This document shows, piece after piece, positions 1,927 to 36,300 of a DNA stretch of 64,000 bases. The DNA lies in NCBI RefSeq assembly GCF_022045235.1, contig NW_027266330.1, positions 1,860,001 through 1,924,000 on the forward strand, read 5' to 3'. A program made the translations under genes and the position numbers. Numbering within the stretch: the stretch's first letter is position 1; every line of letters starts with the position of its first letter. Below the pieces are notes generated by a model. The model saw only the letters and a list, made by a program, of their open reading frames with translations, did no database searches and was not told where the DNA came from. This stretch comes from Haliotis cracherodii (lineage: Eukaryota).

Positions 1927-1973
1927 ATATGAGCACAACAAGAATATTAATACAACCATGTGTTCATTCTCAG

Positions 1974-7041: not shown

Positions 7042-9660
7042 TACACTCAGAGATCACAGAGGCCCTGTCATGTCCCTGTAACAATACACGCCTATAGTAT
7101 GACATGGGTGTACACTCAGAGATCACAGAGGCCCTGTCATGTCCCTGTAACAATACACGCCTATAGTATGACTTGAGTGTACACTCAGAGATCACAGAGG
7201 CCCTGTCATGTCCCTGTAACAATGCACGCCTATAGTATGACTTGAGTGTACACTCAGAGATCACAGAGGCCCTGTCATGTCCCTGTAACAATACACGCCT
7301 ATAGTATGACATGGGTGTACACTCAGAGATCACAGAGGCCCTGTCATGTCCCTGTAACAATACACGCCTATAGTATGACATGGGTGTACACTCAGAGATC
7401 ACAGAGGCCCTGTCATGTCCCTGTAACAATACACGCCTATAGTATGACTTGAGTGTACACTCAGAGATCACAGAGGCCCTGTCATGTCCCTGTAACAATG
7501 CACGCCTATAGTATGACTTGAGTGTACACTCAGAGATCACAGAGGCCCTGTCATGTTCCTGTAACAATGCACACCTATAGTATAACATGGGTGTACATTC
7601 AGAGATCACAGAGGCCCTGTCATGTTTCTGTAACAATGCACACCTATAGTATGACATGGGTGTACATTCAGAGATCACAGAGGCCCTGTCATATCCCTGT
7701 AACAATGCACACCTATAGTATGGCATGGGTGTACACTCAGAGATCACAGAGACCCTGTCATGTTCCTGTAACAATGCACACCTATAGTATGGCATGGGTG
7801 TACACTCAGAGATCACAGAGTCCCTGTCATATCCCTGTAACAATGCACACCTATAGTATGGCATGGGTGTACACTCAGAGATCACAGAGGCCCTGTCATG
7901 TTCCTGTAACAATGCACACCTATAGTATGGCATGGGTGTACACTCAGAGATCACAGAGGCCCTGTCATATCCCTGTAACAATACACGCCTATAGTATGAC
8001 TTGAGTGTACACTCAGAGATCACAGAGGCCCTGTCATGTCCCTGTAACAATGCACACCTATAGTATGGCATGGGTGTACACTCAGAGATCACAGAGACCC
8101 TGTCATATCCCTGTAACAATACACGCCTATGGTATGACTTGAGTGTACACTCAGAGATCACAGAGGCCCTGTCATGTCCCTGTAACAATGCACGCCTATA
8201 GTATGGCATGGGTGTTCACTCAGAGATCACAGAGACCCTGTCATGTTCCTGTAACAATCGAACCTATAGTATGACATGAGTGTAGACTCAGAGATCACAG
8301 AGGCCCTGTCATGTTCCTGTAACAATGCACACCTATAGTATGACATGGGTGTACACTCAGAGATCACAGAGACCCTGTCATATCCCTGTAACAATGCACG
8401 TCTATAGTATGGCATGGGTGTACACTCAGAGATCACAGAGGCCCTGTCATGTTCCTGTAACAATGCACACCTATAGTATGGCATGGGTGTACATTCAGAG
8501 ATCACAGAGGCCCTGTCATGTCCCTGTAACAATGCACACCTATAGTATGACATGGGTGTACACTCAGAGATCACAGAGACCCTGTCATATGCCTGTAACA
8601 ATGCACACCTATAGTATGGCATGGGTGTACACTCAGAGATCACAGAGGCCCTGTCATGTTCCTGTAACAATGCACACCTATAGTATGGCATGGGTGTTCA
8701 CTCAGAGATCACAGAGGCCCTGTCATGTTCCTGTAACAATGCACACCTATAGTATGGCATGGGTGTACATTCAGAGATCACAGAGGCCCTGTCATGTCCC
8801 TGTAACAATGCACACCTATAGTATAACATGGGTGTACATTCAGAGATCACAGAGGCCCTGTCATGTCCCTGTAACAATACACACCTATAGTATAACATGG
8901 GTGTACACTCAGAGATCACAGAGGCCCTGTCATGTCCCTGTAACAATGCACACCTATAGTATAACATGGGTGTACATTCAGAGATCACAGAGGCCCTGTC
9001 ATGTCCCTGTAACAATGCACACCTATAGTATGACATGGGTGTACACTCAGAGATCACAGAGGCCCTGTCATGTCCCTGTAATAATGCACACCTATAGTAT
9101 GGCATGGGTGTACACTCAGAGATCACAGAGGCCCTGTCATGTCCCTGTAACAATGCACACCTATAGTATGGCATGGGTGTTCACTCAGAGATCACAGAGG
9201 CCCTGTTATGTCCCTGTCACAATGCACACCTATAGTATGACATGGGTGTACATTCAGAGATCACAGAGGCCCTGTTATGTCCCTGTCACAATGCACACCT
9301 ATAGTATGACATGGGTGTACATTCAGAGATCACAGAGGCCCTGTTATGTCCCTGTCACAATGCACACCTATAGTATGACATGGGTGTACATTCAGAGATC
9401 ACAGAGGCCCTGTTATGTCCCTGTCACAATGCACACCTATAGTATGACATGGGTGTACATTCAGAGATCACAGAGGCCCTGCCATGTCCCTGTAACAATG
9501 CACACCTATAGTATGACATGGGTGTACATTCAGAGATCACAGAGGCCCTGTCATATCCCTGTAACAATGCACACCTATAGTATGACATGGGTGTACATTC
9601 AGAGATCACAGAGGCCCTGTCATATCCCTGTAACAATACACACCTATAGTATGACATGAG
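7042..9660. repeat. 69-bp tandem minisatellite (~38 copies)
   Basis: TACACTCAGAGATCACAGAGGCCC recurs with a 69-bp period (7042, 7111 and onward). This explains the 23-aa repeat ORFs on both strands. Confidence 0.96.
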
Positions 9661-10919
9661 TTGTGTAAGGTTTCATATTCCTTTCCGTTGCGCCAAGTCG
9701 CATTCTACTCGTCCTCGTCGTGTGAGGAAAATATTATATATTAATGGACAGAAAATGTTATATATTAATGGACAGAACTGTATTATGCGGAGCCCTGTGG
9801 CAAGTATAAAACATTTTTTTCTTATTTCTAAAAACTGATATTTACTATNNNNNNNNNNNNNNNNNNNNNNNNNNNNNNNNNNNNNNNNNNNNNNNNNNNN
9901 NNNNNNNNNNNNNNNNNNNNNNNNNNNNNNNNNNNNNNNNNNNNNNNNNNNNNNNNNNNNNNNNNNNNNNNNNNNNNNNNNNNNNNNNNNNNNNNNNNNN
10001 NNNNNNNNNNNNNNNNNNNNNNNNNNNNNNNNNNNNNNNNNNNNNNNNNNNNNNNNNNNNNNNNNNNNNNNNNNNNNNNNNNNNNNNNNNNNNNNNNNNN
10101 NNNNNNNNNNNNNNNNNNNNNNNNNNNNNNNNNNNNNNNNNNNNNNNNNNNNNNNNNNNNNNNNNNNNNNNNNNNNNNNNNNNNNNNNNNNNNNNNNNNN
10201 NNNNNNNNNNNNNTAGTGCGAAACTATTGGCGGCCATTTCCGTCTACACAATCCCCCACACATCAGAAATGCTGTAGCTAAGCGGAACCTTAGTCAACAG
10301 TTTATTGAGCAAGCAGACATTGTATCTATGTACATTTCCTGCTTTGTGACCTTATTTGCATATTGATTGGTCGCGCCACCAAGTTTATCAGATAACACTA
10401 TCCATCATATGATACACTTATTTACCTTCCGCTACACATCAGTTGAACATGTTTACATGGACCGATGTTCTCAAAATGTCAATTTGAAACCTGAACATCT
10501 CTTTCGTTTTCACGTTTTCACCCAGTATTCCATGAATTATATAATCTTCTTGGACAAAGGGGGAACGGCGCAGTCAACTTAGGTGCCAAAATTGCGGATT
10601 AGTGTACCAGGGTTGTTAATGTGGGAGGAGCGCTCAAAGTGGTGCAGGTGAACCCACGGTCATTGGCCTCTGACACCGAGGACGCCACTCTGCGACTGTG
10701 CCACCCGTACCCACGTACCTGCTGTTCCTCTTGTAACTACTGTCCAAACTGATCGATGTGCGAAGATTGTATGATAACATTTTATGACACCCGCCTTTAT
10801 GTACATATGTCATATTTGCATCAGGTTTATGATTTGTATCTCCCTTTAAGAAGTCGAAATATATCTGCAACGTATTCACTGTATGGCTGTAGCAGGTGGG
10901 TACAGTAGTACTTTGTGTG

Positions 10920-11144
10920 ATTGTTTGTCGTTTAACGCCACACTCAGCAATATTCCAGCTGTATGACGGCGGTCTGTAAATAATCGAGTCTGGACCAGAC
11001 AATCTAGTGATTGATGTCATGAGCATCGATCCACGCAGTTGGGATACAATCAACCAAGTCAGCGAGTCTGTCCACCCGATCCCGATAGTCGCCTCTTTAG
11101 AATGGGTTGCTGAAGAACTATTCTAACCCAGATCTTCACGGGTC
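10920..11144 (-). mobile_element. SINE-like repeat, family 2
   Basis: Reverse complement of the element at 21715-21963 (head ACCCGTGAAGATC, tail GCTGGAATATTGCTGAGTGTGGCGTTAAAC(CAAA)n). Confidence 0.8.
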
Positions 11145-15921: not shown

Positions 15922-17321
15922 ATGTTGGTGTGGATGTATGTAACGTAGTAAGAGGGGAGGTAACTCTAATGTATGTTACATAATCTCTCACATTTCAAAG
16001 CTTACAAGTTACACATTCCATTCTACTAAGTCAAGTAACTGTATTGGCTGTTGATCACTTATCAGGAACACACACAATCATGACTCATTGTTTCTTCTCC
16101 TTGTCGTAAATACACCCATAATACTTGCATCGGAAGCCCTGATTTGTTATTGGTATCTAACAATAATTTAATGATATTGAACAAGAAAAGATTACAATAT
16201 CTCATTAATTACATTTTTGAGTGTATATTTATCCCCCCCCCCCCCCCCCCCCCCCCTTCTAATTTTTTTTATTGGATTTACAGTATGTTCCTCATATAAT
16301 TATATTTTTCTGAAAGTGAATAAATATGTAATATGGTCGGTGAAACATACCCAAACATGACATTTGCAGACAATAAACTTTGACATTTACTGATGGCACT
16401 TTACCAAACTTAATATTTCAAAATTCCTTATCAGTATCAGTCATTCGAATTATTAACGGGTCAAATCAGTTGATTTGAAGTAAGTTTCATACAAGCTTGT
16501 TTCTAAAACAATAACCTACACAGTCAATCACGGACAAAAGTCACAAGGCAAGGACCATGAAAATTGATCTTCCTGGACTAATGGACTAACAGTAGATATC
16601 AACTCTCATTCCATTTCACCAAATTTTATTTCTAGACGCTTGACACACATGGTTTGATGATCAGATAAATCAAATCAATACCCAGATTAGGTGAACGGTG
16701 GTATTGCAGGAAATGTGCTAAAACGTCGTAAAACCTAGGTCACTGACTCACTCACTTTCCAATGGGTGAAATGTGAAGAGGACATAAAATGCTCAGAATT
16801 AACAAACGACAACACAGATAATGAGTTCCAATAAGTCACCTTGCGACATAACTGATAACTGAAAGGAACATTATGAATCCGTCATTAGCTTTTGATCCAA
16901 TTCTTATCTAAACCCGGAATGGGTCTTTATATTTTTCAGGTTCATATTTTAAACAAACTGTTGAAGGCACCTGTGTACCATTACTTTTGACAGATGTGAA
17001 TCATGTGAAGCATGACTAGTTTGTATGTATGGTGTATTTCAGCACGTCAAGGCAAAAGGGAACACACCTGGCGATGTTCCTCATCCATGGCTTCTTGGGG
17101 ACACCGAACTGATGTGAGACGGGGTGTTTGTTGGAGAGGCAGGGATGACGATCAACCAAATGATTTGATATGGCCAAAACAGCTTTAATCTACCCTCTAA
17201 AATTAGTTTTAATATTACCTCCCTTTGTAAATTGACCTGACAATGTCAGAGCCTGACACTTTCGTTAATGACAGTTGTTTGTTTCTCGTCTTTACCAGAA
17301 GGGGTGCTGCTGACACAGACC

Positions 17322-17355
17322 ATGTTGGACAGGGGCCTGATGCTGCTACTGCTGG
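17322..17355 (+). CDS. Gene B coding exon 1: start codon and signal peptide
   Basis: Acceptor tttaccag|17299, accATG at 17322, MLDRGLMLLLL, phase-1 donor |GTACGT. Joining the next exon gives MLDRGLMLLLLVVGVLG-QEC. Confidence 0.8.
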
Positions 17356-17789
17356 GTACGTTTATACGTTTGACATCAATACTGACAGCTACATGTAGTT
17401 AGGCCCTTGTGATGAATATATAGATAATGTTTCATGGTTTGGTTTGTGTCCTGAAAGGTATGTAATTAATAGCTATTTTTTTACCTGAACTAATAAAAAG
17501 TGAACTAAAAGTGGTGGCCATAGATATTTATCATCCAAAACTGGCTCCCACAGGAGATATCGCTTGGATGAGTTCAAGCGATATCTACACCGTAGATATC
17601 GCTGCAATGAAATTACATCACAATGCTTTGCAGGCCATTGTGATGTCACTGGTTACCATGACGTCACAATCAAATGACATCACTAATGGCTCTGCTACTG
17701 AAGCTGTTTGCAGTACTTTTTACGCTGAAGACACTGCTAATTACTGTCTACAAATTAAAAAAGTTGAAAGAATGATGTTGGATGATAAA

Positions 17790-17940
17790 TAAAATCTCAC
17801 CCTCGTGTCTTTTAATATCAAATATATCAACACTCGTTGATAAAAGTGGCAAAAATCCTCGGCAAGCCTCGGAATTTTTCCCTTTTTATCAACTCGTGTT
17901 GATATATTTGATATCAAAAGACACTCGGATGAGATTTTCT
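17790..17940. repeat. Long imperfect palindrome, probably part of a non-autonomous DNA element (~17.5-17.95 kb)
   Basis: The arm AAAATCTCACCCTCGTGTCTTTTAATATCAAATATATCAACACTCGTTGATAAAAG matches the reverse complement of about 17882-17938. Confidence 0.8.
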
Positions 17941-18770
17941 GTATAGTTCCATATCTATCTTCAGAGGTTAACGATAATTTGCCAAAAAAGAAAGCACTGA
18001 AAATGTTAATGTACACATATTTCGATTTTATTGTACTTGAACTTACATCACACCCCTTTCTTATCACCTGAACATTCCATTTGTCAGTCCACCCTGTCAT
18101 AGTTTGTAAACTTTCGCATTTTCAACATTTCCCCTGAAACCACAAGACAAGTGTAGTTTATCATTTGACAATATGATCCCAGCAAAGGCTCTTAGAAATC
18201 TGCCCCGTATTTGTAAATAGTAATTGCAGAAGTACTGTCAGCTTAAGTGTTTGTTGTTCAGTGCAGCACTATGTACCAGATCATCCAGTAATTGAGGAGC
18301 AATGATCCGTGCACTTGGTATAAAAGCAAAGGTTATCCACCCAAACCACTAAGTCCCCTCTTGTAACCAGTATACATTGTCAGGTTCATACATAACGTCA
18401 CCTCTACCAACAGTGTAGGTTGTCCATCTGATTCATTAAGTCCCCTTTAAAGCCGGGATAGGTAGCTGGGGAACAAATCTAGCCTGAAATCCCCAGGAAT
18501 GTTTATGTTAAAAAAGTAACTTGCAATTACGGTGTGATTTACGCATGTATTAAAATGAAATAGTCATGTTGTTTTTCTGGCATAAAAGCTTCTCTACCTT
18601 ATGTTTGCTTATCCTTCTTAATGTCTTTATCTTTTTGATAATCTCAAGTAAATGTTCCAGAAACATTCAGGTGAGGTACAAAGTAATGCGGCACTAGTTT
18701 CTTTGACATGATGACAAATGCATTGATTATTCCATCAAAAAGTTTAAGAGTACTCTTTTCTCCCTTCCAG

Positions 18771-19049
18771 TTGTGGGCGTATTGGGCCAGGAGTGTCCCG
18801 AGGGCAAATATGGAGAACACTGTGAACTGAACTGCAGCCGTTCCTGTTTTCCCCATTCCGGCGAGGATGTGCACTGTGACAGACACAGTGGCAAGTGTTC
18901 AGAAGGCTGCGTGGTTGGATGGTACGGCGATCAGTGCCATGTACCCTGTAAAAAGAACTGCCCGCGGCACATCTGCAGTCAGCAGACTGGTCACTGTACT
19001 CGGCCGTGTGAAGGAAACAAAACGGGGGATTTCTGTGAGATCCACCACG
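18771..19049 (+). CDS. Gene B exon 2: EGF-like ectodomain (~2 MEGF-type modules)
   Basis: Acceptor cccttccag|, donor |GTATGT, phase 1-1. Encodes CPEGKYGEHC...CVVGWYGDQC...CEGNKTGDFC. Confidence 0.9.
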
Positions 19050-20049
19050 GTATGTACAACTGGGGGCTGGGAATCATCAGATAGTGGCATTTAATTCATT
19101 GATTACTGTCATTGCAAAGCTGTATTGTGTAATTATCACACACAGAATACTGTAAATTACATGCACATGTCAATGGATGACAAACAGAGAAACATGTTAC
19201 TTACTTACTTTATCTCCATTTGAACATTGTTGATTATGCACATGCTGTCTATGATCTGGCATTTACTTATGACTAAAACAAGAACTGTATAAATGCGGAC
19301 ACTTCATATTTTATTCAAAGCTGTCACATGTTTTATAGACCACCATTTAACATCATGGACTGCCACTCATGTTAGTTGAATCATGGGATAGTATTAAAGA
19401 CAGAATTACACAACTTAAAAAACTTTGAATATTTTCGCATTAGGGATTTGCAAAAAGCAAACCCGAGCCTGTCAGTTAACCAGTAAACATAGCCTTGATA
19501 ATTGAACATAACATTAAATTTCTTAAAGCGAGGGACTTTTTTTAAAAAAAAGCAAAACTATTTTTCGTACATGTATAATAATGACCCCATATGTATTCCA
19601 GGTTAGAACAGGTCCCAAGCAATAATGGTCGTGAGAGTCAATTTATTTGTTTAGTGCTCGGTGACTGGTTGATTGCGTCAGAGACCATATATCATAGCTC
19701 ATCGTACCCCACATCGTACTCCACATCACTGTCTGGTTCAAACTAGATTATGTAAATGATATATTCATATGGCTGGAATATTGCTATATACGCACACAAG
19801 GAGGAAACTTCCATCCTCAGCAAAACATGATATTCTTTCATTTTAACTAAATAAGTTAACAATTATGAATAAATGTGGCACAAGGCATACTGTGTGTATG
19901 ATAGGACAATAGGTAGTTCATGGGGTCAAGGGGTGAAGGGTGAAGGCCACATGGATCAAGATGCTCAGTTACAGCACTTTACTGACTGTATTTCACTTCC
20001 AAACTCTAGCATTGTTCAGCAGTGTAGAGACAAGTGTATTATGTTACAG

Positions 20050-20173
20050 AGAATGGTCAAAAACAGTCACAAGAACCTGCCTCAATACCACTGGTCGCCA
20101 TACTTGTCCCTGTGTCCGCCATCCTCCTCCTCATCATCATCACCGTGGCTGTACTCTTCATAAGACACAGAAA
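20050..20173 (+). CDS. Gene B exon 3: transmembrane segment
   Basis: Acceptor gttacag|, donor AA|GTATGA, phase 1-2. Encodes ...IPLVAILVPVSAILLLIIITVAVLFIRHRK. It is 124 bp, the same length and phases as the gene A TM exon. Confidence 0.88.
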
Positions 20174-20414
20174 GTATGACAATATTTCACTCATGATCAT
20201 GATTAGGTTTCCTTTCAATGATAAGACAATAACTTCTGCTTGATACCATATACCATGGCTTTTAGTATGTGCACTCTGTGTATGTTACTTCCCTAGTCTG
20301 TAAACTGGTTGAATCGGCACAATACTAGATTATCTTCAACTACGTTGATTCTTACAGGACATATTAGGCATGTTCGACTTGATTAAGTAGGATTTCATTG
20401 GAGAAAACAGTCGC

Positions 20415-20850
20415 ATTATTATCCCCCACTACGAAGTGGAAGAGGGATACAAGAATGGGTGCTGTCTTTCCGTCCTTCCGTCTGTCCGTCCGTCGGCCTC
20501 GTTTCGTTTCCGGAACAGAACTCAAACACCATGAGAGATATTTTTACCAAACTTGGCACATGGGTATGTCTGTGCTGGTGCCTTTTGATAGTTTGGGATT
20601 TTGAAAAATTATATTTGTCGAGTTTCCATGGCAACGACTTTGACTTGGACTGAAATTGGCGGTAGTGCACGCTTCCGGAGCAGATCGTGAAAACCGTAGA
20701 ACATTTCTTAACCAAACTTGGCACATAGATAGGACTAGTGATGAACTGGTGACTTTTGGTGGTTCATGTTTTGTGTTTCACAGAAACTCACATCAATGAT
20801 TACAGTGAAAGAGACCTCCAGGGACATCAAGTCCATCCAGGAGACACTAC
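20415..20850. mobile_element. Helentron-associated non-autonomous element (HINE/DINE-1-like)
   Basis: TTATCCCC...GGGATA short hairpin start, (CCGT)n microsatellite, and two ~165-bp internal repeats sharing ACCAAACTTGGCACAT. This is the standard HINE layout. Confidence 0.6.
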
Positions 20851-21652
20851 ACATGGTATTGATGTGTATGTGTTTCAAGAACAGTGTCAGGCTATGTGAT
20901 GTAACGTCATCTCACAGTATTGAATACATTTCCTTTCTTGTTGGCAAGTTCTGCACTGTTTGTGTGTGTGTTCCTCCAAAAGTGTCATGGACAGGGGTTG
21001 TCACATTCACTTACTGATTTCATGCAGAAACTTCAGGAACCTGTCCTAGTTACTGGGGATTTCCACGGTGTTCTGAGTGAAAAACTAAAATTTTGAGATT
21101 TCTTTAATGTGCAGAAAACATTTTGAGCTACAGTGGACTTCTTCACCGATCATGCCAGTGCGGTGGCATTCCAGATTCCAGTCTACTACTCAGATCATCA
21201 GATCATTGATACTGTACTTCCAAGTACACCTCGCATTGATCTCTAAGTAAAGAAAGAACTCCCTTACTTCTCTGATTATTTTTAAAGTAATAACACATCT
21301 CATCACAAATACAGTTTACGTGTTCTATCATAAACTGTAGATGGCAAGAAACACCAGTAATAATTGTTTAGTGCTTGGCAATTAGGCCATTTACTAAATG
21401 TTCCAGTGAACATAGTTCACAGGGGCTAATGACTTGCACACAATTGGACATATCACATTGGCGGGGGATATGAGTATTGCATGGTTGTGAGGTATAGTTG
21501 GTGACCATTTTCCGCTGCACAACAAATAAAAAGCAAGCTTTATTATCACCTGTGCCATAATAAGCATTAACCACAACAGGAATTGATTAATGATAATTTC
21601 ATGAATTGTGTTGATTGTCATATTACTAATGTTATGTGTTATTCTGTTTCAG

Positions 21653-21663
21653 ATCTAATCAGG
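21653..21663 (+). CDS. Gene B exon 4: 11-bp microexon
   Basis: ctgtttcag|ATCTAATCAGG|GTAAGT. It converts phase 2 to phase 1, exactly what is needed to link the TM exon to the downstream exons in frame. Confidence 0.75.
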
Positions 21664-21714
21664 GTAAGTATTAAATCAGTTGTTGAAAGATATCAGTGAT
21701 TACACATACCAACT

Positions 21715-21963
21715 ACCCGTCAAGATCCGGCGTACAATAGGTCTCCAGCAACCCATGCTTGCCGTAAAAGGTGACTAACGGGATCGGGTGGTCAGGCTCG
21801 CTGACTTGGTTGATGCATGTCATCGATCCCAATTGCGTGGATCGATGATCATGATATCAATCACTTGATTGTCTGGTCCAGACTCGATTATTTACAGACC
21901 GTCGTCATATAGCTGGAATATTGCTGAGTGTGGCGTTAAACAACAAACAAACAAATCAAACAA
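21715..21963 (+). mobile_element. SINE-like repeat, family 2, with 12-bp TSD
   Basis: ACACATACCAAC flanks the element at 21702-21713 and 21964-21975. (CAAA)n tail. Confidence 0.88.
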
Positions 21964-22621
21964 ACACATACCAACACAATTAAGTAAATATAGAGAGTAA
22001 ATATAGTTTCAGTTTACTCCCAACATGTCAACTGGGCGTGTGAGGAAAGCCTAAAGTCATGCAGGTCTCAGACGTTTGAAGGCCCAGGGAGAAGAGTTCT
22101 GTTTTTAGTTACAAAAATCCATAGGATTGAATATTAGAAACATATGTTAATGATCGAACTTATTCCACGCTTAGCTGTGATGTATTGAATTATTGTCTCA
22201 TATTATGATATATTAGGAACATGTAAAGGTCTTATCTGTATTTTAGATGTAAAGTGTACTGGTGTTTAGTTAGACTGAAGTTGTACCTCATGGGTGCTGT
22301 GCAGTTTTTTAATCAAACAAATTAATTTTTTCCAAGTAATTTTACTTTGTTTAATTTTTAAAATTATGATTAATCCTACTCCCCAATGTAAATGTCCAAT
22401 AGTTTTAAGGTTGTCCTATTTTAAAATCCAATCAATAAAACCAAGTTACTGAATCTTCTAAGACTGAAAGTTATCGAACAATTGAATTTTCAAAAGGTAA
22501 GCTGCTCCATCCTATCCATCCAAAGACTAAATCATGACTTCCTACTATTATACATTTTTTTTAGAATATGGTTTTGAAGTTGATTATTCAAGTTTTTCAG
22601 ACAGATTTCTCTCATTTTCAG

Positions 22622-22666
22622 CCTCGGACGACGTGGAGTGTGGAGAACTGCTTAGCCCAGGAGGAG
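22622..22666 (+). CDS. Gene B exon 5: 45-bp juxtamembrane linker
   Basis: ctcattttcag|...GGAG|GTAGGA, phase 1-1. Encodes ASDDVECGELLSPGG. Confidence 0.7.
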
Positions 22667-23419
22667 GTAGGAACACAGACACATGTATTTTATGTAATGT
22701 TAGCTCACTAAAAGTGAGCTCACGTCAAGGCCTGATTGCCCGATGCCAGTGGTGTGTGGTCCAGTGTAAACGCCTTCACTTCAGACACCACTGAAACAAT
22801 GCTGAAACTTTATATACTTGTTCACTCCAATGATGACCAATTTGTTCAAGCGAGTCAAATCCAATTTTTACTGTAAACGCTGCTTTTTGAGGTCATTATT
22901 GGGTCATCTCTGTTCAAACTAGAATAGTTTCATACCAGATGACCAAATAATGAGTTTGTAGCGGTGCCCAACACATGTTCCGTTTTTGTGATACTTTAAG
23001 TTTTGACTTTGATTTGATCTTCACACTTCCACCATACTGACAACTCAAACTTTTAGCCATTTTCTTTCAAAATGTAATGAAATGTAGTATATGTGTTGTG
23101 ACAAAACCCTTTCAATAAACATCAGAAATCTCTAAAAAAAGGAGTCCTTTGGACAATTTCGACTATATCAAAAGCACGTGTTTATGAATCACTATCAAAC
23201 AGATATCCTGCTCCATCGTGGCCCCCTGATCAATCAAGTTTTGAGCAATATGAAATCCTCCTTAAAAGAGTACGCTCGATTGTACCTCAAAAGTTGTGAA
23301 ATGTGGACACCGAAAGCTGGTACTGCTAGAATATTGCTCAATTAACATTGACTATTGGACAGTTGACGTCATCCCTCCCAACAGTCTTGTGGATAGTTGT
23401 CACTCTGATTCTTTAGCAT

Positions 23420-23622
23420 AGGTAATAATATTACCTATGACTGTGGCGATGAATAGCATTTGATCACTTACCCATTCTGATATTAGGTGCTAATATTACC
23501 TATGACTGGGGCGATGAATAGCATTTGATCACATACCATTCTGATATTAGGTGCTAATATTACCTTTGACTGGGGCGATGAATAGCATATGTTCACTTAC
23601 CCATTCTGATATTAGGTGCTGA
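23420..23622. repeat. ~65-bp tandem repeat, 3 copies
   Basis: TAATATTACCT...GGCGATGAATAGCAT...CCATTCTGATATTAGGTGC at about 23426, 23491 and 23555. Confidence 0.85.
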
Positions 23623-23758
23623 TGTTATTTGCATTCAAACAATTTGTATTTGTATAAATATAACATGCAACTCGCATGATATAACTGTTTTAAGTAGCAT
23701 GTTGCTTATTGGTAAGATGTGTGATACATATGACCAGCAATAGTCCTTTGTGTTACAG

Positions 23759-24744
23759 TGGACACTGACCTCATCGTTGCGTGCAGGGAGGGGAAACTAA
23801 AGGCAGTCAGAGACATTCTGTATAAGAGCCCGGAGGACATCAACAAGAAAGGCTGTGGCGGGATGACACCAGTGATGTGGGCAGCAAGGAGGGGACACAG
23901 AGAAGTGCTGGACTTGCTTGTGAGAAAAGAAGCTGATCTGAAACTTGTGGATGATGCCAGTAACAATATCCTTCACCGGGCCTGTTATGGAGGGCATGTG
24001 GCAATGGTGAAACATGTTGTCTCAAAGAACATGGTGGACATCAACAGTAAGGGACGGGATGGGAGAACCCCATTGATGTGGGCAGCTCGGGAGGGGAAAA
24101 GGCAAATCTTTGACTTACTTGTGAGTAAAGGGGGCCTTCCATCAGAGGTTGACAAGGATGGAAACAACATCCTGATACTGGCCTGTTGGGGTGGAAATGA
24201 GGAGATTGTGAAGTATATCATCTCACATGACGATGTAGACATCGATGGAAGAGGACAGTCTGGCAGGACTCCATTGATGGCAGCAGCATACAAGGGACAT
24301 GGAAAGGTCTTTGACCTGCTGGTTGATAAAGAAGCTGATCTGACACTAGTTGATGATGCTGGTGACAACGTCCTCCATGTGGCCTGTCTTGGAGGACATG
24401 TGGATATTGTTAGCCGTGTCCTCAAGCTGGGCAAGGTGGACATAAACAAACAAGGTCAATGTAGCAGGACACCACTGATGGTGGCAGCAAGGCTTGGAAA
24501 TAATGAAATATTTGATTTACTGGTGACTGAAAGAGCTGATGCATTAACAGAGGATGATGACAGAAACACCATCCTTCATCTGGCCTGTGAGGGAGGGCAT
24601 ATTGACATAGTGAAGTATGTACTCTCGCTGGATACTGTGAATATCAACGCCAGGAACAAACAAAATGAAACAGCAACCATGCTGGCAAGAAAAGGAGGCG
24701 ACGTGTGCAACCTTCTTGTGTTGCATGGTGGTCTCAGTAGATGA
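23759..24744 (+). CDS. Gene B terminal exon: ~10 ankyrin repeats (intracellular domain)
   Basis: Acceptor tgttacag|, phase 1 (the ORF-track 'start' is the split GTG codon). Repeated GxTPLMxAA...G / NILHxAC.GGH..IV motifs. Stop TGA at 24742-24744. Confidence 0.93.
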
Positions 24745-27267
24745 AAGGAGAAGGACAGCTGAGAGTATCCTTTTTTGAATTGTTGAAACTGTTAAACATA
24801 CCAGCTACATCGGACGAGAGCTTGATAATGGTCCACTGGTCAATTGGAATGTTGTTTTGATGTTCCATACTTCAACCACATGTTGATGGCGGAGGTCAAA
24901 CGAAAAACACTTGAAACATTCTTATGAAACATACAGTTCTTAATAGATTATTCTTCACCCAATAACAATAATAGCCCCCAAGGTATGCCTTGTGCTACCA
25001 GCCCAGAACGTTAGCTAAGAAAACAAGCATGGAGTCCATGATAGTCATATATTCTTCAAAGGCATTCGAATGAAAGTAGCCTCAGCAAAATTTAAGGGAA
25101 AAGTACATCCTCGGTGTCATAGTTGTGGGCATATTATCATATTTCTCATCAGGGGGAAAAAACCCATTATACTGCCTGTCGAAGACTTAACTTTAATCAT
25201 TTCTCATAAATCATCTGTTCCTCTATGCATGCATTTTGAGTGTGTTGGCTTCACAGCAGGGACTGGACTCTGTTGTCTTTGTTATTGGGGTCTGTAGCTC
25301 TCTCTGAATGAACTGAAATAGTACAGAATGAGACAGATCAAGAAAAACAAACACTGAAGAGTGGGAAAAAACGTTTAGAGAAATCCTTTGTGCACAGACG
25401 TGGAGAGTCATTCGGGGATTTCAGATGCAAATTTTATTTTATTAGAAATGCTACCAACAAGAATGCCGGCCAGCTAGAACACAAAAGCCCAGGTACTGGA
25501 GCACAGCCTACAGCATGCCTGGTGTAATTCCAACAGTCTGGCAATGCCTTTGTGTACTTGGCCCAGACATCCAGATTGTGACACATGCCATACAACATTG
25601 TCATGCTCTCAGTGGGCACATGTCTTTGACATAAGGGTAATTTCACACTAGAGGGCCAAATGAACTACAAAACAAAAGCGGAAACTATTATTCCCATTAC
25701 AGTACTACTTTCCTACACATTCAATATATTTATGTGTCATTTCCATCACGATACTTTGCAGTGATAATGCCTCTGACAGTATTGAAGATCACATATGAAC
25801 TTGGGGATCATTTGACACCATAGCTTGTAGACCAATGTATAAATATGTTTTTAGAAAATACAACAACGTAGTCTGGCATTTGGTAATGACAGATTAAGAT
25901 TAAGTATTCCCATGCAGTTGAAGCTTGCTGTTCATGCATCTAGCTTTAATGTGTAAAGTTTTAAGCTGCTTGTTTCATTGTAGATGTTCCTATGTTGATC
26001 TTGCACAACGTAACAGAATTGTCATTAAATGCATTTAGTTTGTACCAGAACAAGCTGCCAAGTGGACTGAACACAGTCACGTGCATGTTGCTTTGGAAAG
26101 TCAGATTGACAGTGATAGTGATTGTGAACAATATGAGGCAAAAGTCTCCAGTTAGACACATCAGCGCCAATGGTATTAAAGGAAAATGAATAGTGTGGAA
26201 GAGTTGTCTCCCTGATACCACACAGACGTCCAGGCAATAAAAAAAAAAGAAACAATCAAAGCTAGGAATGTTTAAACACCCATTATTTATGAGATATTAT
26301 TTTACATATAACAAGGATTTTTATACCATATATTTTACCATTCGGATTTGGGTTCATAAAAACCCTTGGACATGTTTTATCCGACTTATAAAAAGACCAA
26401 TGAATCTGAAACAACATTTATCAACAATTGTATGTATCAAGTCATACTTTACGTGAACCTTTGGAAACGAGCGTAAAGCATCTCTTCCTGGCGTCCTGGC
26501 GTACTTGCAACAGAGATTCGTAAAACCATTGTTTATTATCAGCACCTCTGTAGCCTGGTACGTGAACCACTAAACTACAGCTAAACGAACCTCTGAAATA
26601 TACATTACCTCTGTCATTTGATGTTACATCATTCCGCACATTTCCTTGCCTATGTTGTGTTCAAATGCAAAATACATCTCTAGCGAGGGACATTCACGTA
26701 TCACAATATAATCGGAAGATGTAAATATAAAATCCCTTGGATATTCTGTGAAACCATAGATATATTATATAAAATACTGGGGATACTTCTTAAGGTTGTA
26801 GTAAAAATATGGCCTCAAAACTCAAACCCCGTGAGTCAACATGGCCCACAATCAAATGGGCTTTAAAAAGTCATAACGGCCAGAGGTAAAAATGTTAGAA
26901 TGGCCACCATAATGATCAATGAACGTCCACTGTGAGTGGGCTGTGATGTTCTTGCCCCTTGTCCTTTGCAATTATGCCCAGCCGCCTAAAGACAGACACG
27001 TAGTCTGTCTCCATGAACCACCTTTGTCTATTACCCCATCCACCATCAGTCAAGTCCGTTAATATGTGCTTTGAGGCAGCAACACGGCGCTCCTGTGAGA
27101 CTGAGCTTCCAGGAGTTTGTTGTCTTTTTAATGTTTGTGGCCGTTGGGACTCTTTCTGTGACCGTTTCGACCTTAACTGTTGAGGCCGTTTTGACCTGCT
27201 TTTCAATCACCGTTTATGAGATTTACCCCATTTGGAGAACAAAAGGATGATTAAAATGTCATTTAGG

Positions 27268-30367: not shown

Positions 30368-33300
30368 ACTGTAGATGTAATATTGTCATATCCCACATTC
30401 ATACACTAACTAATCAGCGTGACATGCTCCATGGTTCTTGATCTACATGTCAACGTACTGTAGATGTAATATTGTCATATCCTACATTCATACACTCTGT
30501 AATCAGCGTTACATGCTCCATTGTTGTTGATCTACATGTCAACGGAATGTAAATGTAATATTGTCATATCCCACATTCATACACTATGTAATCAGCGTTA
30601 CATGTTCCAATGTTGTTGATCTACATGTCAACGGAATGTAGATGTAATATTGTCATATCCTACATTCATACACTATGTAATCAGCGTTACATGCTCCATT
30701 GTTGTTGATCTACATGTCAACGGAATGTAGATGTAATATTGTCATATCCTACATTCATACACTATGTAATCAGCGTTACATGTTCCAATGTTGTTGATCT
30801 ACATGTCAACGGAATGTAGATGTAATATTGTCATATCCTACACTCATACACTATGTAATCAGCGTTACATGCTCCAATGTTGTTGATCTACATGTCAACG
30901 GAATGTAGATGTAATATTGTCATATCCTACATTCATACACTATGTAATCAGCGGTACATGCTCCATGGTTCTTAATCTACATGTCAACGGAATGTAGATG
31001 TAATATTGTCATATCCTACATTCATACACTATGTAATCAGCGTTACATGCTCCATTGTTGTTGATCTACATGTCAACGGAATGTAGATGTAATATTGTAA
31101 AATCCTACATTCATGAACTATGTAATCTGCTTTACATGCTCCAATGTTGTTGATCTACATGTCAACATACTGTAGATGTAATATTGTCATATACTACATT
31201 CACACACTATGTAATCATCGTTATATGCTCCATTGTTGTTGATCTACATGTCAACGTACTGTAGATGTAATATTGTCATATGCTACATTCATACACTATG
31301 TAAACAGCGTTACATACTCCGATGTTGCTGATCTACATGTCAACGGAATGTAGATGTAATATTGTCATATCCCACATTCATACACTATGTAATCAGCGTT
31401 ACATGTTCCAATGTTGTTGATCTACATGTCAACGGAATGTAGATGTAATATTGTCATATCCTACACTCATACACTATGTAATCAGCGTTACATGCTCCAA
31501 TGTTGTTGATCTACATGTCAACGGAATGTAGATGTAATATTGTCATATCCCACATTCATACACTATGTAATCAGCGTTAAATGCTCCAATGTTGTTGATC
31601 TACATGTCAACGGAATGTAGATGTAATATTGTCATATCCCACATTCATACACTATGTAATCAGCGTTAAATGCTCCATTGTTGTTGATCTACATGTCAAC
31701 GGAATGTAGATGTAATATTGTCATATCCTACATTCATACACTATGTAATCAGCGTTACATGTTCCAATGTTGTTGATCTACATGTCAACGGAATGTAGAT
31801 GTAATATTGTCATATCCAACATTCATACACTAACTAATCAGCGTTACATGCTCCATTGTTGTTGATCTACATGTCAACGGAATGTAGATGTAATATTGTC
31901 ATATCCAACATTCATACACTAACTAATCAGCGTTACATGCTCCAATGTTGTTGATCTACATGTCAACGGAATGTAGATGTAATATAGTAATATCCCACAT
32001 TCATACACTATGTAATAAGCGTTACATGCTCCATTGTTCTTGATCTACATGTCAACGTACTGTAGATGTAAATTGTCATATCCTATATTCATACACTATG
32101 TAATCAGCGTTACATGCTCCAATGTTGTTGATCTACATGTCAAAGTACTGTAGATGTAATATTGTCATATCCTACATTCATGCACTATGTAATCAGCTTT
32201 ACATGCTCCAATGTTGTTGATCTATATGTCAACGTATTGTAGATTTAACATTGTCACATCCCACATTCATACACTATGTTATCAGCGTTACATGCTCCAA
32301 TGTTGTTGATCTACATGTCAACGGAAGGTAGATGTGATATTGTCATATCCTACATTCATACACTATGTAATCAGCGTTACATGCTCCAAAGTTGTTGATC
32401 TACATGTCAACGCAATGTAGATGTAATATTGTCATATCCTACATTCATACACTATGTAATCAGCGTTACATGCTCCATTGTTGTTGATCTACATGTCAAC
32501 GGAATGTATATGTAATATTGTCATATCCCACATTCATACACTATGTAATCAGCGGTACATGCTCCATGGTTCTTGATCTACATGTCAACGTACTGTAGAT
32601 GTAATATTGTCATATCCTACATTCATACACTATGTAATCAGCGTTACATGCTCCATTGTTGTTGATCTACATGTCAACGGAATGTAGATGTAATATTGTC
32701 AAATCCTACATTCATGAACTATGTAATCTGCTTTACATGCTCCAATGTTGTTGATCTACATGTCAACATACTGTAGATGTAATATTGTCATATCCTACAT
32801 TCACACACTATGTAATCAGCGTTACATGCTCCATTGTTGTTGATCTACATGTCAACGTACTGTAGATGTAATATTGTCATATCCTACATTCATACACTAT
32901 GTAAACAGCGTTACATACTCCGATGTTGCTGATCTACATGTCAACGGAATGTAGATGTAATATTGTCATATCCCACATTCATACACTATGTAATCGGCGT
33001 TACATGCTCCAATGTCGTTGATCTACATGTCAAAGTACTGTTCATGTCATATTGTCATATCCTACATTCATACACTATGTAATCAGCGTTACATGCTCCA
33101 ATGTTGTTGATCTACATGTCAACGGAATGTAGATGTAATATTGTCATATCCAACATTCATACACTAACTAATCAGCGTTACATGCTCCAATGTTGTTGAT
33201 CTACATGTCAACGGAATGTAGATGTAATATAGTAATATCCTACATTCATACACTGTGTAATAAGCGTTACATGCTCCATTGTTCTTGATCTACATGTCAA

Positions 33301-36300
33301 CGTACTGTAGATGTAATATTGTCATATCCTATATTCATACACTATGTAATCAGCGTTACATGCTCCAATGTTGTTGATCTACATGTCAACGTATTGTAGA
33401 TGTAACATTGTCACATCCTACATTCATACACTATGTTATCAGCGTTACATGCTCCAATGTTGTTGATCTACATGTCAACGGAATGTAGATGTGATATTGT
33501 CATATCCTACGTTCATACACTATGTAATCAGCGGTACATGCTCCAAAGTTGTTGATCTACATGTCAACGTACTGTAGATGGTATATTGTCATATCCTACA
33601 TTCATACACTATGTAATCAGCGTTACATGCTCCAATGTTGTTGATCTAAATGTCAACGGAATGTAGATGTAATATTGTCATATCCTACATTCATATACTA
33701 TGTAATCAACGTTACATGCTCCAATGTTGTTGATCTACATGTCAACGGAATGTAGATGTATTATTGTAAAATCCTACATTCATACACTATGCAATCAGCG
33801 TTACATGCTCCAATGTTCTTGACCTACATTTCAAAGGAATGTAGATGTAATATTGTCATATCCCACATTCATACACTATGTAATCAGCGTTACATGCTCC
33901 AATGTTATTGATCTACATATCAACGGAATGTAGATGTAATATTGTCATATCCCTCATTCATACACTATGTAATCAGCGGTACATTCTCCGATGTTGTTGA
34001 TCTACATGTCAACGGAATGTAGATGTGATATTGTCATATCCTACATTCATATACTATGTAATCAACGTTACATGCTCCAATGTTGTTGATCTACATGTCA
34101 ACGGAATGTAGATGTATTATTGTAAAATCCTACATTCATACACTATGCAATCAGCGTTACATGCTCCAATGTTCTTGACCTACATTTCAAAGGAATGTAG
34201 ATGTAATATTGTCATATCCCACATTCATACACTATGTAATCAGCGTTACATGCTCCAATGTTATTGATCTACATATCAACGGAATGTAGATGTAATATTG
34301 TCATATCCAACATTCATACACTATGTAATCAGCGGTACATTCTCCGATGTTGTTGATCTACATGTCAACGGAATGTAGATGTAATATTGTCATATCCCAC
34401 ATTCATACACTATGTAATAAGCGTTACATGCTCCATTGTTCTTGATCTACATGTCAACGTACTGTAGATGTAATATTGTCATATCCTATATTCATACACT
34501 ATGTAATCAGCTTTACATGCTCCAATGTTGTTGATCTACATGTCAACGTACTGTAGATAGAATATTGTCATATCCTACATTCATACACTGTGTAATCAGC
34601 GTTACATGCTCCAATGTTGTTGATCTACATGTCACCGGAATGTAGATGTAATTTTGTCATATCCCACATTCATACACTATGTAATCAGCGTTACATGCTC
34701 CAATGTTGTTGATCTACATGTCAACGTACTGTAGATGTAATATTGTCATATCCTACATTCATACACTATGTAATCAGCGTCACATGCTCCAATGTTGTTG
34801 ATCTACATGTCAACGTACTGTAGATGTAATATTGTCATATCCCACATTCATATACTATGTAATCAACGTTACATGCTCCAATGTTGTTGATCTACATGTC
34901 AACGGAATGTAGATGTATTATTGTAAAATCCTACATTCATACACTATATAATTAGCTTTACATGCTCCAATGTTGTTGATCTACATGTCAACGTACTGTA
35001 GATGTAATATTGTCATATCCTACATTCATACACTATGTAATCAGCGTTACATGCTCCAATGTTGTTGATCTAAATGTCAACGGAATGTAGATGTATTATT
35101 GTAAAATCCTACATTCATACACTATGCAATCAGCGTTACATGCTCCAATGTTCTTGACCTACATTTCAAAGGAATGTAGATGTAATATTGTCATATCCCA
35201 CATTCATACACTATGTAATCAGCGTTACATGCTCCAATGTTATTGATCTACATATCAACGGAATGTAGATGTAATATTGTCATATCCCACATTCATACAC
35301 TATGTAATCAGCGGTACATTCTCCGATGTTGTTGATCTACATGTCAACGGAATGTAGATGTGATATTGTCATATCCTACATTCATATACTATGTAATCAA
35401 CGTTACATGCTCCAATGTTGTTGATCTACATGTCAACGGAATGTAGATGTATTATTGTAAAATCCTACATTCATACACTATGCAATCAGCGTTACATGCT
35501 CCAATGTTCTTGACCTACATTTCAAAGGAATGTAGATGTAATATTGTCATATCCCACATTCATACACTATGTAATCAGCGTTACATGCTCCAATGTTATT
35601 GATCTACATATCAACGGAATGTAGATGTAATATTGTCATATCCAACATTCATACACTATGTAATCAGCGGTACATTCTCCGATGTTGTTGATCTACATGT
35701 CAACGGAATGTAGATGTAATATTGTCATATCCCACATTCATACACTATGTAATAAGCGTTACATGCTCCATTGTTCTTGATCTACATGTCAACGTACTGT
35801 AGATGTAATATTGTCATATCCTATATTCATACACTATGTAATCAGCTTTACATGCTCCAATGTTGTTGATCTACATGTCAACGTACTGTAGATGTAATAT
35901 TGTCATGTCCTACATTCATACACTATGTAATTAGCTTTACATGCTCCAATGTTGTTGATCTACATGTCAACGTACTGTAGATAGAATATTGTCATATCCT
36001 ACATTCATACACTGTGTAATCAGCGTTACATGCTCCAATGTTGTTGATCTACATGTCACCGGAATGTAGATGTAATTTTGTCATATCCCACATTCATACA
36101 CTATGTAATCAGCGTTACATGCTCCAATGTTGTTGATCTACATGTCAACGTACTGTAGATGTAATATTGTCATATCCTACATTCATACACTATGTAATCA
36201 GCGTCACATGCTCCAATGTTGTTGATCTACATGTCAACGTACTGTAGATGTAATATTGTCATATCCCACATTCATATACTATGTAATCAACGTTACATGC

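What the first reader, a model, noticed from the sequence alone, without database searches (positions are those of the whole stretch)
17322..24744. Intact EGF-TM-ankyrin receptor: a minimal Notch-like architecture that is not Notch
Seen: six exons with canonical GT-AG sites and consistent phases (1,1,2,1,1) join into one 1479-nt frame (492 aa). It encodes a signal peptide, ~2 MEGF-type EGF modules, a TM ending VAVLFIRHRK, a ~20-aa linker and ~10 ankyrin repeats. The ORF track shows these as unrelated pieces. Established: EGF outside plus ANK inside is the hallmark of Notch/LIN-12, which also has LNR/HD domains, a RAM WxP motif and a PEST tail; none is visible here. MEGF10/SCARF/Draper receptors have no ankyrins. 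Inference: an independently assembled receptor class that couples a scavenger-type ectodomain to an ankyrin scaffold, possibly in innate immunity, and possibly released by intramembrane proteolysis. I cannot tell whether relatives already exist under automatic 'ankyrin repeat protein-like' names.
Basis: partly seen in the sequence, partly recalled or inferred. Interest (0 to 1): 0.9.

Follow-up and report, generated by a model that had tools for sequence, protein, structure and literature searches.

The report
Abalone EGF–membrane–ankyrin receptor-like gene
This black-abalone gene is real and expressed, and it joins a small scavenger-receptor-type outer domain through one membrane span to ten ankyrin repeats inside the cell; it is not Notch, it is one of about twenty such genes seen so far only in abalones, RefSeq already models it under a generic ankyrin name, and its function is untested.

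Summary
The six exons join into one 1479-nt frame. RefSeq's Haliotis cracherodii protein "ankyrin repeat domain-containing protein 50-like" (510 aa) is that same protein plus 18 N-terminal residues. Spliced contigs from three studies show the 22666|23759 junction directly and the other junctions indirectly.

The protein has a signal peptide, one 14-cysteine double EGF module, a TM helix, a 24-aa linker and ten ankyrin repeats. The EGF module's best solved fold match is human SCARF1. The linker carries an acidic dileucine-type motif, ECGELL.

It is not Notch: there is no LNR/NOD, RAM, NLS or PEST, and the ankyrin array is consensus-type.

It is not unique. About 20 loci in this genome pair the same EGF exon with an ankyrin exon. 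All 16 ankyrin-bearing relatives I found are from four Haliotis species. The same EGF-TM cassette also heads STAND NTPase-ankyrin genes, which this scan found before on other DNA of this genome (s1-829554), and receptor tyrosine phosphatases in other molluscs.

Both halves are under purifying selection.

An immune role and proteolytic release remain speculation. Verdict: a lineage-specific, domain-shuffled receptor-like family, of moderate interest.

The parts
17268..17355 (+). Exon 1: start codon and most of the signal peptide. RefSeq starts at ATG 17268; the ATG kept in the ortholog and paralog is 17322 (MLDRGLMLLLL...). Donor GT at 17356.
   Evidence: P0005 starts MLGRGLMLLLL and P0006 starts MLTQTMLDRGLL. 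The AF2 model has a helix at residues 13-34. ATG 17322 has A at -3; ATG 17268 has T at -3 (read).
18771..19049 (+). Exon 2 (phase 1-1, 279 nt): end of the signal peptide plus one 14-cysteine double EGF module of SCARF/MEGF/Draper type. Two N-glycosylation sequons (NCS, NKT).
   Evidence: 14 Cys and 7 Gly are invariant in 30 paralogous exons; paralogs hit EGF_laminin (6e-7), EGF_PEAR1L and EGF_STAB1-2. AF2 pLDDT 86, best PDB match SCARF1 8hna (E 3.7e-4). RNA contigs start exactly at 18770; sequons.
20050..20173 (+). Exon 3 (124 nt): short stalk, transmembrane helix (LVAILVPVSAILLLIIITVAVLFI) and the RHRK stop-transfer.
   Evidence: Kyte-Doolittle peak of 3.09; helix 138-171; contigs in three runs lie exactly on 20049-20173 with 64 nt before and up to 79 nt after.
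21653..21663 (+). Exon 4: 11-nt micro-exon (ATCTAATCAGG; completes K, then S-N-Q and the first base of A).
   Evidence: Present in the RefSeq model and in the ortholog and paralog proteins ('RHRKSNQASDD'). The 31-nt context with AG and GT is identical in paralog locus L001 and has 1-3 changes in L004 and L005. Contig-length arithmetic fits. No read shown to me crosses it directly.
22622..22666 (+). Exon 5 (45 nt): acidic juxtamembrane linker SDDVECGELLSPGG, carrying an acidic dileucine-type motif [DE]xxxL[LI] (ECGELL).
   Evidence: Joint 22666|23759 (GT..AG) in runs X1, X2 and X6. The aligned side of 44 nt equals the exon length. The motif recurs in 6 of 16 family clusters, with near variants in others. 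The segment has low confidence in AF2.
23759..24744 (+). Exon 6 (986 nt): ten ankyrin repeats arranged as five 66-aa double repeats, then the stop TGA at 24742-24744.
   Evidence: Ank_2 1.5e-68; ten helix pairs, pLDDT above 90; 66-aa periodicity in the paralog alignment. RNA contigs cover 23757-24688.

Best explanation
Shown: this is an intact, spliced and transcribed six-exon gene of Haliotis cracherodii. It encodes a type I membrane protein of 492-510 aa. The parts are a signal peptide, one double EGF module of the SCARF/MEGF/Draper kind outside, one TM helix, a short acidic linker, and ten consensus-type ankyrin repeats in the cytoplasm. It belongs to an abalone gene family of about 20 loci here, present in four Haliotis species. 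The family was built by joining a much-reused '2-EGF exon + TM exon' cassette to an ankyrin-array exon taken from the very large Haliotis ankyrin expansion. Both halves evolve under purifying selection. Inferred: the protein most likely sits at the cell surface or in endosomes. The ectodomain binds a ligand or another EGF protein, as SCARF1 and MEGF10 do. The ankyrin solenoid is a membrane-tethered docking platform that recruits cytosolic partners. The ECGELL motif directs adaptor-dependent internalisation. The same cassette heads STAND NTPase-ankyrin (NLR-like) genes in this genome, and this is a lineage-specific expansion in a marine invertebrate. A role in recognition or innate defence is therefore the likeliest setting, but nothing here tests it.
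For: Gene model. Domains. Family: one search found at least 150 scored copies (1632 candidates) of the EGF exon. One search found the ANK exons. My cross-reference gives about 20 loci with an EGF exon followed by an ANK exon on the same strand within 2-20 kb, mostly at C67:0.5-5 Mb. Searches show that all 16 ANK-bearing representatives are Haliotis. Cassette reuse: PTPase tails, nSTAND3-ANK, short tails. Selection: omega is about 0.25 for the EGF exon and 0.49 for the ANK exon. Sorting motif. Established knowledge (from memory, not tested here): [DE]xxxL[LI] binds AP adaptors; ANK solenoids are protein-docking surfaces; SCARF1, MEGF10 and Draper are endocytic or phagocytic receptors.
Against: There is no functional, localisation or tissue data. 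The run labels are coded and 'RNA' is the tool's guess, although the spliced joints show cDNA. Pfam does not call the EGF module in this copy. There is no excess of amino-acid change at canonical ANK binding positions (0.54 against 0.48), which gives no support to an arms-race sensor. The dileucine motif is short and absent from more than half of the family clusters. Restriction to Haliotis rests on the best 150 of 934 hits and on the genomes present in the databases.
Confidence: 0.6

Rival explanations
1. It is a STAND-less relative of the EGF-TM-STAND-ankyrin (membrane NLR-like) genes. It would act as a decoy, regulator or sensor-only partner: it shares ligands or ankyrin contacts with the full receptors but cannot switch or oligomerise itself.
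For: P0237 has the same EGF module (45% identity), a TM, a linker motif EGEPLL, an nSTAND3 NTPase and about 30 ANK repeats of the same type. An earlier scan note, s1-829554, reports about 40 such genes (that number is not tested here).
Against: The ANK arrays are only about 42% identical to those of P0237. There is no trace of a STAND exon in this gene or its introns. The family has kept the short form in four species under purifying selection, which fits an independent function just as well.
Confidence: 0.15
2. It signals like Notch. Ligand binding leads to ectodomain shedding, gamma-secretase cuts the TM, and the ankyrin tail is released and acts in the nucleus or cytosol.
For: It is a type I protein with a small ectodomain and a cytoplasmic ANK array. 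The language-model features place it nearest to Notch clusters (score 0.90, but only 125 of 256 shared features).
Against: There is no LNR/NOD regulatory region, no RAM WxP, no NLS-like basic cluster and no PEST tail. The ANK array has ten consensus-type repeats, not the Notch type. With Notch families excluded, the Atlas shows only generic ANK clusters.
Confidence: 0.07
3. It is an adhesion or structural anchor with no signalling role. The EGF module mediates cell-cell or cell-matrix contact, and the ankyrin array ties the membrane to the cytoskeleton or clusters membrane proteins, as ankyrins do.
For: After the DARPins, the closest natural PDB matches for the ANK array are ankyrin-1/2 and NOMPC. 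SCARF-family ectodomains are known, from memory, to interact in trans.
Against: There is no spectrin-binding or other ankyrin-family domain. A fast-duplicating, tandemly clustered family is unusual for a structural anchor.
Confidence: 0.1
4. It is an artefact: two neighbouring genes (a small EGF-TM gene and an ankyrin gene) merged by prediction or read-through.
For: Small EGF-TM genes with short tails and ANK-only genes both exist in Haliotis. The micro-exon join is not shown directly by a read.
Against: The linker exon is spliced to the ANK exon in three studies. Contig lengths fit one molecule from exon 2 to exon 6. The frame is open through five phase-matched junctions. The same architecture is seen at about 20 loci and in four species.
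Confidence: 0.03

Closest known systems
Notch / LIN-12 / GLP-1 receptors
   Same: A type I membrane protein with EGF-like modules outside and an ankyrin array inside. Nearest clusters by language-model features.
   Different: No LNR, NOD/NODP, RAM (WxP), NLS or PEST. The EGF module is SCARF/laminin-type, not cbEGF. It has ten consensus-type ANK repeats rather than the seven Notch-type repeats, and no Notch chain is among the 60 best PDB matches. The architecture is analogous, not homologous.
SCARF1/SREC-I, MEGF10/11, PEAR1, Draper/CED-1 (class F scavenger / MEGF receptors)
   Same: The ectodomain module type: the best solved fold is SCARF1 8hna. Relatives carry these names in RefSeq. Paralogs hit EGF_PEAR1L, EGF_laminin and EGF_STAB. 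Type I topology.
   Different: Only one double module instead of 5-17 EGFs. No EMI domain. CxxxC where MEGF10 has CxC (my reading against the MEGF pattern from memory). The tail is an ankyrin array instead of a Ser/Pro-rich or NPxY/ITAM tail.
EGF-TM-STAND(nSTAND3)-ankyrin genes of the same genome (for example P0237; scan finding s1-829554)
   Same: The same EGF module at the N-terminus, one TM, an EGxxLL-type juxtamembrane motif, and the same double-repeat style of ANK array.
   Different: No NTPase domain or exon. Ten ANK repeats instead of about 30. 510 aa against 1623 aa.
Haliotis 'ANKRD50-like / ANKRD17-like / RF_0381-like' ankyrin-only expansion
   Same: The ANK exon is 40-60% identical to hundreds of such genes, including single-exon ORFs of 1532-2108 aa on contig C20.
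   Different: Those genes lack the signal peptide, EGF module and TM.
Molluscan receptor-type tyrosine phosphatases and MEGF-like proteins with the same EGF module
   Same: The ectodomain is built from the same module, followed by one TM. They occur in Pinctada, Tegillarca, Gigantopelta, Biomphalaria and Mercenaria.
   Different: They have many tandem modules, and tails that are PTPase domains or MEGF-type, never ANK in the hits examined.

Membership tests
Notch/LIN-12 | Negative regulatory region: three LNR repeats (PF00066) plus NOD/NODP | tested here: not met
   Pfam scan of P0003 at E up to 10 lists only ANK families and noise.
Notch/LIN-12 | Tandem hEGF/cbEGF repeats (PF00008/PF07645) | tested here: not met
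   No such hit. The module is laminin/SCARF-type.
Notch/LIN-12 | RAM region with WxP after the TM; NLS; C-terminal PEST | tested here: not met
   Pattern scan of P0003 finds no W.P, no K[KR].[KR] or basic run in the tail, and the protein ends right after the last ANK repeat.
Notch/LIN-12 | Notch-type ankyrin domain (seven repeats) | tested here: not met
   Ten repeats. The best PDB matches are DARPins, ankyrin-1/2, NOMPC, latrotoxin and TRPA1. No Notch chain is among the best 60 of 340 matches.
Notch/LIN-12 | Type I topology with EGF outside and ANK inside | tested here: met
   Signal-peptide-like N-terminus, one TM followed by RHRK, and ANK after it. Topology is inferred from the positive-inside rule, not measured.
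MEGF10/Draper/CED-1 | N-terminal EMI domain and a long run of EGF repeats | tested here: not met
   No EMI. There is one 14-Cys double module only.
MEGF10/Draper/CED-1 | Cytoplasmic NPxY and YxxL/ITAM motifs | tested here: not met
   No NP.Y in the protein and no Y..[LI] in the linker.
MEGF10/Draper/CED-1 and SCARF (ectodomain module only) | EGF module of the CxxGxxGxxC...GxC type with an EGF fold | tested here: met
   Invariant Cys/Gly pattern. Paralog hits to EGF_laminin, EGF_PEAR1L and EGF_STAB1-2. SCARF1 8hna is the best fold match, E 3.7e-4, probability 1.0, but TM-score only 0.37.
SCARF1/2 | Long Ser/Pro-rich cytoplasmic tail | tested here: not met
   The tail is a 24-aa linker plus ten ANK repeats.
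Membrane-anchored STAND-ankyrin (NLR-like) genes of Haliotis | STAND NTPase (nSTAND3/NACHT-like P-loop) between the TM and the ANK array | tested here: not met
   None in P0003. tblastn of P0237 residues 1-620 against the window finds only EGF exons.
Haliotis EGF-TM-ANK family (unnamed; defined here) | One or two 14-Cys modules, one TM, a cytoplasmic ANK array, and the same exon structure | tested here: met
   P0003, P0005, P0006, P0020, P0024, P0032, P0033, P0035, P0037, P0039, P0121, P0122, P0133, P0135, P0205, P0227, P0241, P0247 and P0252. Paralogous loci L001, L008 and L009.
Ankyrin repeat superfamily | 33-residue helix-turn-helix repeats matching Pfam Ank models above threshold | tested here: met
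   Ank_2 1.5e-68 and Ank 1.9e-53. Ten helix pairs at pLDDT above 90.

The most novel reading that the evidence does not exclude
The EGF-TM-ANK genes are a distinct signalling class of abalone innate immunity. They would be surface sensors whose ankyrin tail either partners with the membrane-anchored STAND-ankyrin (NLR-like) receptors as a sensor, decoy or regulator, or is released by regulated proteolysis. That would be a second, independently evolved 'EGF outside, ankyrin inside' signalling route besides Notch.
Probability: 0.12. Interest if true: 0.75.

Novelty: new variant of a known kind. Interest (0 to 1): 0.4.

Why it matters
This is a clean, datable example of a new receptor-like architecture made by exon shuffling. 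A phase-1/phase-1 EGF exon plus a TM exon is reused with ankyrin, STAND-ankyrin, phosphatase or short tails, and the product then spreads by tandem duplication within one genus.

If the family acts in recognition or defence, it would add a membrane-tethered ankyrin branch to the expanded immune repertoires of marine molluscs. Black abalone is an endangered species hit by withering syndrome, so its defence genes are of practical interest.

The gene also shows that 'EGF outside plus ANK inside' is not diagnostic of Notch. Automatic names hide the architecture, and language-model neighbours suggest Notch, so both can mislead here.

Tried and rejected
1. Pfam on exon 2 alone and on the whole protein found no EGF family at threshold. 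I resolved the module through its paralogs and its predicted fold.
2. A PDB sequence search with exon 2 gave only spurious hydrophobin matches at E about 0.1.
3. The word-index search with the ectodomain, TM and linker found only 7 proteins, all Haliotis EGF-TM-ANK. It is too insensitive to bound the family's range.
4. ESM Atlas: the Notch clusters at 0.90 share few features. With Notch families removed, only generic, mostly bacterial, ANK clusters remain. No large EGF+ANK non-Notch cluster turned up.
5. Diversifying selection on the canonical ANK binding positions: rejected at this crude level. Pairwise Nei-Gojobori omega was 0.54 against 0.48 for the framework. My anchor pattern missed the ninth repeat.
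6. A hidden STAND exon in the introns: none.
7. The giant ANK ORFs on C20 as STAND genes: they are pure ANK.
8. Rfam on the intronic repeats: no match.
9. Literature: six searches and two papers read gave no description of an EGF-TM-ANK family. A blank in an open-access library is not proof of absence.
10. Read laying could not show the micro-exon or the 19049|20050 and 20173|21653 joints directly. The joint table was filled by interspersed-repeat joints, and 19 rows were not shown.
12. Searches used single exons by reference and the database protein P0003. The join was made only in a local script for frame and hydrophobicity checks.

Full report
ORGANISM AND LOCUS. The ankyrin exon finds a 100% identical RefSeq protein of Haliotis cracherodii (black abalone): P0003, 510 aa, "ankyrin repeat domain-containing protein 50-like". 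The window is contig C67:1,860,001-1,924,000 of a 1.18-Gb assembly.

THE OBSERVATION. Every exon has AG before it and GT after it. The lengths are 34, 279, 124, 11, 45 and 986 nt, the phases are 1,1,2,1,1, and the total is 1479 nt with a single stop at the end.
- The last 492 residues of P0003 equal this translation exactly. RefSeq starts 18 codons upstream, at ATG 17268.
- The ortholog in H. rufescens (P0005) and a paralog (P0006) start at or near the second ATG. That ATG has the better context: A at -3, against T at -3 for the first. The start is therefore ambiguous, but either choice gives a signal-peptide-like N-terminus.
- Searches used the exons by reference and the database protein P0003.

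TRANSCRIPT EVIDENCE. Four runs that held 10-19% of the stretch's words were laid on 18760-24750.
- Depth lies on the exons. It is zero in the introns except at interspersed repeats.
- A GT..AG joint at 22666|23759 is present in X1, X2 and X6, which come from three studies. Its aligned upstream side is 44 nt, the length of exon 5, so the acceptor at 22622 is also used.
- Contigs begin exactly at 18770 and lie exactly on 20049-20173 with unaligned letters on both sides.
- One 268-nt contig has 64 nt before exon 3 and 79 nt after it. That equals 11 + 45 + 23, so it fits a single molecule running from exon 2 to exon 6 through the micro-exon. This is arithmetic, not a read I could inspect.
- The tool only guesses that the runs are RNA, but the spliced joints show they hold cDNA.
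- The micro-exon is further supported by 'RHRKSNQASDD' in P0003, P0005 and P0006. Its 31-nt context with both splice sites is also kept in paralog loci: identical in L001 and with 1-3 changes in L004 and L005.

THE ECTODOMAIN. Pfam sees no EGF domain in this copy: E is 0.27 for EGF_laminin. A PDB sequence search gives only noise.
- The exon is nevertheless a sharply defined module. In 30 paralogous exons of this genome, 14 Cys and 7 Gly are invariant, in two units of the form C-x8-C-x3-C-x3-C-x(4-10)-C-x6-C-x3 plus a closing C-x8-C.
- Seven paralogs reach EGF_laminin (best 6.4e-7). Others reach EGF_STAB1-2 and EGF_PEAR1L.
- An AF2 model built on that alignment has pLDDT 86. Its best solved match is the N-terminal fragment of human SCARF1 (8hna; E 3.7e-4, probability 1.0, 32% identity over 82 columns, TM-score only 0.37). 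Jagged/Delta DSL-EGF and laminin LE modules follow.
- A full HMMER scan of 1.84 billion representatives finds 934 proteins with the module. RefSeq names them SCARF1-like, MEGF6/10/11, PEAR1-like and draper-like.

THE MEMBRANE SPAN AND LINKER. Exon 3 gives a strong hydrophobic stretch (Kyte-Doolittle 3.09) followed by RHRK. In the AF2 model it is a helix. The linker is 24 aa and modelled with low confidence. It contains ECGELL, which fits the acidic dileucine pattern [DE]xxxL[LI].
- The strict pattern recurs at the same place in 6 of 16 family clusters: ESGELL, EGTQLL, EGDSLI/EGDNLI, DGETLL, EGEPLL and DLGGLL.
- Near variants occur in others: EGEPLN, DQEVLN and DTQLL.
- A short-tailed draper-like relative has DGEGLL.
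- This is conservation by descent, not independent recurrence. Its role as a sorting signal is my inference from what is known of AP-adaptor motifs.

THE ANKYRIN ARRAY. Pfam Ank_2 scores 1.5e-68. The full-length AF2 model has ten helix pairs at pLDDT above 90. The paralog alignment shows five 66-aa double repeats. The best PDB sequence matches are designed DARPins, ankyrin-1/2, NOMPC, latrotoxins, Kidins220 and TRPA1. No Notch chain is in the best 60.

NOT NOTCH. P0003 has no LNR, NOD/NODP or cbEGF. It has no WxP, no NLS-like basic cluster, no NPxY, and no tail after the last repeat. The ESM Atlas puts Notch clusters nearest (0.90), but with 125 of 256 shared features. The tool's own guide reads that as a distant or chance hit. 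I read it as shared architecture. With the Notch families excluded, only generic ANK clusters remain.

A FAMILY, NOT A SINGLETON. The EGF exon has at least 150 scored copies (1632 first-look candidates) in this genome. The ANK exon has 188 matches at E of 1e-10 or better.
- I cross-referenced the two lists, together with tblastn on fetched loci. This gives about 20 places where an EGF exon is followed on the same strand within 2-20 kb by an ANK exon. Most lie at C67:0.5-5 Mb, around the window.
- The closest paralog (EGF at C67:2,121,752, ANK at 2,126,378) is 83% identical in the EGF exon and 87% in the ANK exon. Others are 80/70, 72/74 and 73/69 (EGF/ANK, in %). So whole genes were duplicated.
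- A few loci pair a 69-77% ANK exon with a 43-52% EGF exon. The halves have therefore not always diverged in step.
- Among the best 150 module-bearing representatives, 16 carry ANK repeats. All 16 are from H. cracherodii, H. rufescens, H. rubra or H. asinina.
- The multi-module relatives come from bivalves and other gastropods. They carry receptor tyrosine-phosphatase or MEGF-type tails.
- The remaining 784 hits were not listed, so absence outside Haliotis is not shown.

THE STAND CONNECTION. One family representative, P0237 (1623 aa), has the same module, a TM, the linker motif EGEPLL, an nSTAND3 NTPase (E 1.1e-23) and about 30 ANK repeats. This matches an earlier finding of this scan on other DNA of the genome (s1-829554). 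Our gene has no NTPase and no remnant of one in its introns.

SELECTION. Pairwise Nei-Gojobori estimates over ten ANK exons and eight EGF exons of the C67 cluster give mean omega of about 0.49 (ANK) and 0.25 (EGF). The canonical DARPin-type binding positions are not faster than the framework: 0.54 against 0.48. Both halves are therefore maintained as coding sequence. The crude test gives no sign of an arms race. One of the ten repeats escaped my anchor pattern.

WHAT IT MOST LIKELY DOES. Shown: the architecture, expression, the family and the selective constraint. Inferred: a surface or endosomal receptor-like protein whose SCARF/MEGF-type module binds a ligand or another EGF protein. The ankyrin solenoid would be a membrane-tethered docking platform, with adaptor-mediated internalisation through ECGELL.
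- A recognition or defence setting is the likeliest. The reasons are the STAND-ANK siblings, the scavenger-type module and the lineage-specific tandem expansion. Kaur et al. 2021 (PMC8195603) describe such expansions with ankyrin and receptor-like architectures as typical of marine invertebrate immune repertoires. Nothing here tests that setting.
- The rivals are a STAND-less decoy or regulator, Notch-like proteolytic release, an adhesion or cytoskeletal anchor, and a prediction artefact. They are scored in their own section.

NOVELTY. The protein is already in RefSeq under a generic, misleading name. I found no paper on an EGF-TM-ANK family. It is a new domain combination of known parts within a known kind of process, namely lineage-specific shuffling of receptor cassettes. 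I class it as a new variant of a known kind, with interest 0.4.

Noticed in passing
window 1727-2935 and 4133-4465 (+); partial copy at 46709-47311 (+): An upstream neighbour gene has a large Cys-rich exon of many MEGF/laminin-type EGF units and a separate cytoplasmic-tail exon. A nearly identical stretch of the EGF exon recurs at 46.7-47.3 kb, as a partial duplicate or pseudogene.
   Followed up: partly
window 21700-21955 (+), 10918-11143 (-), 42950-43217 (-); fragments at 19722-19785, 51424-51466 and 61632-61675: A SINE-like interspersed repeat of about 250 bp lies in intron 4 of the gene, with two more copies (81-85% identical) in the window. RNA-run contigs pile up on it to word depths of 5x10^4 to 5x10^5. 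It has no Rfam match. A second repeat at 20560-20760 also draws high depth.
   Followed up: partly
window 6-1413, 4967-6338, 7042-9658, 30370-37463, 62016-63750: Five large satellite arrays: 55 bp x 26, 20 bp x 68, 69 bp x 38, 89 bp x 80 (7 kb) and 42 bp x 41. The 69-bp array produces the long spurious ORFs at 6956-9659 on both strands.
   Followed up: no
window 52439-57696: A GTGGTA/GTGGTG-type microsatellite field of about 5 kb, broken by N runs. It explains the GC skew of 0.75-0.92 in that region.
   Followed up: no
G000 contig C20: L031 674-7000 (-) and L032 1095-5693 (-): Single-exon ORFs of 2108 and 1532 aa made of nothing but ankyrin repeats (about 60 and 45 repeats), 55-60% identical to this gene's ANK exon. 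Contig C20 holds dozens of such matches.
   Followed up: partly
P0237 (RefSeq XP_071098478.1, H. cracherodii, contig of 40.9 Mb): An EGF module - TM - nSTAND3 NTPase - ankyrin (about 30 repeats) protein of 1623 aa, i.e. a membrane-anchored NLR-like architecture using the same N-terminal cassette. It agrees with scan finding s1-829554.
   Followed up: partly
P0027 (H. asinina), P0064 and P0265 (H. rubra), P0186 (H. cracherodii): RefSeq models with the EGF module joined to ANK repeats but no detectable TM segment. They may be TM-exon-skipping isoforms (which would be secreted) or mis-predictions.
   Followed up: no
window 48764-49207 (+) and 51673-52068 (+): ORFs that look like fragments of a transposase with an N-terminal HTH and of an integrase-type protein. 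They probably come from decayed mobile elements downstream of the gene.
   Followed up: no
window 23419-23627: A 65-bp x 3.2 tandem repeat inside intron 5, about 130 bp upstream of the ANK exon's acceptor.
   Followed up: no
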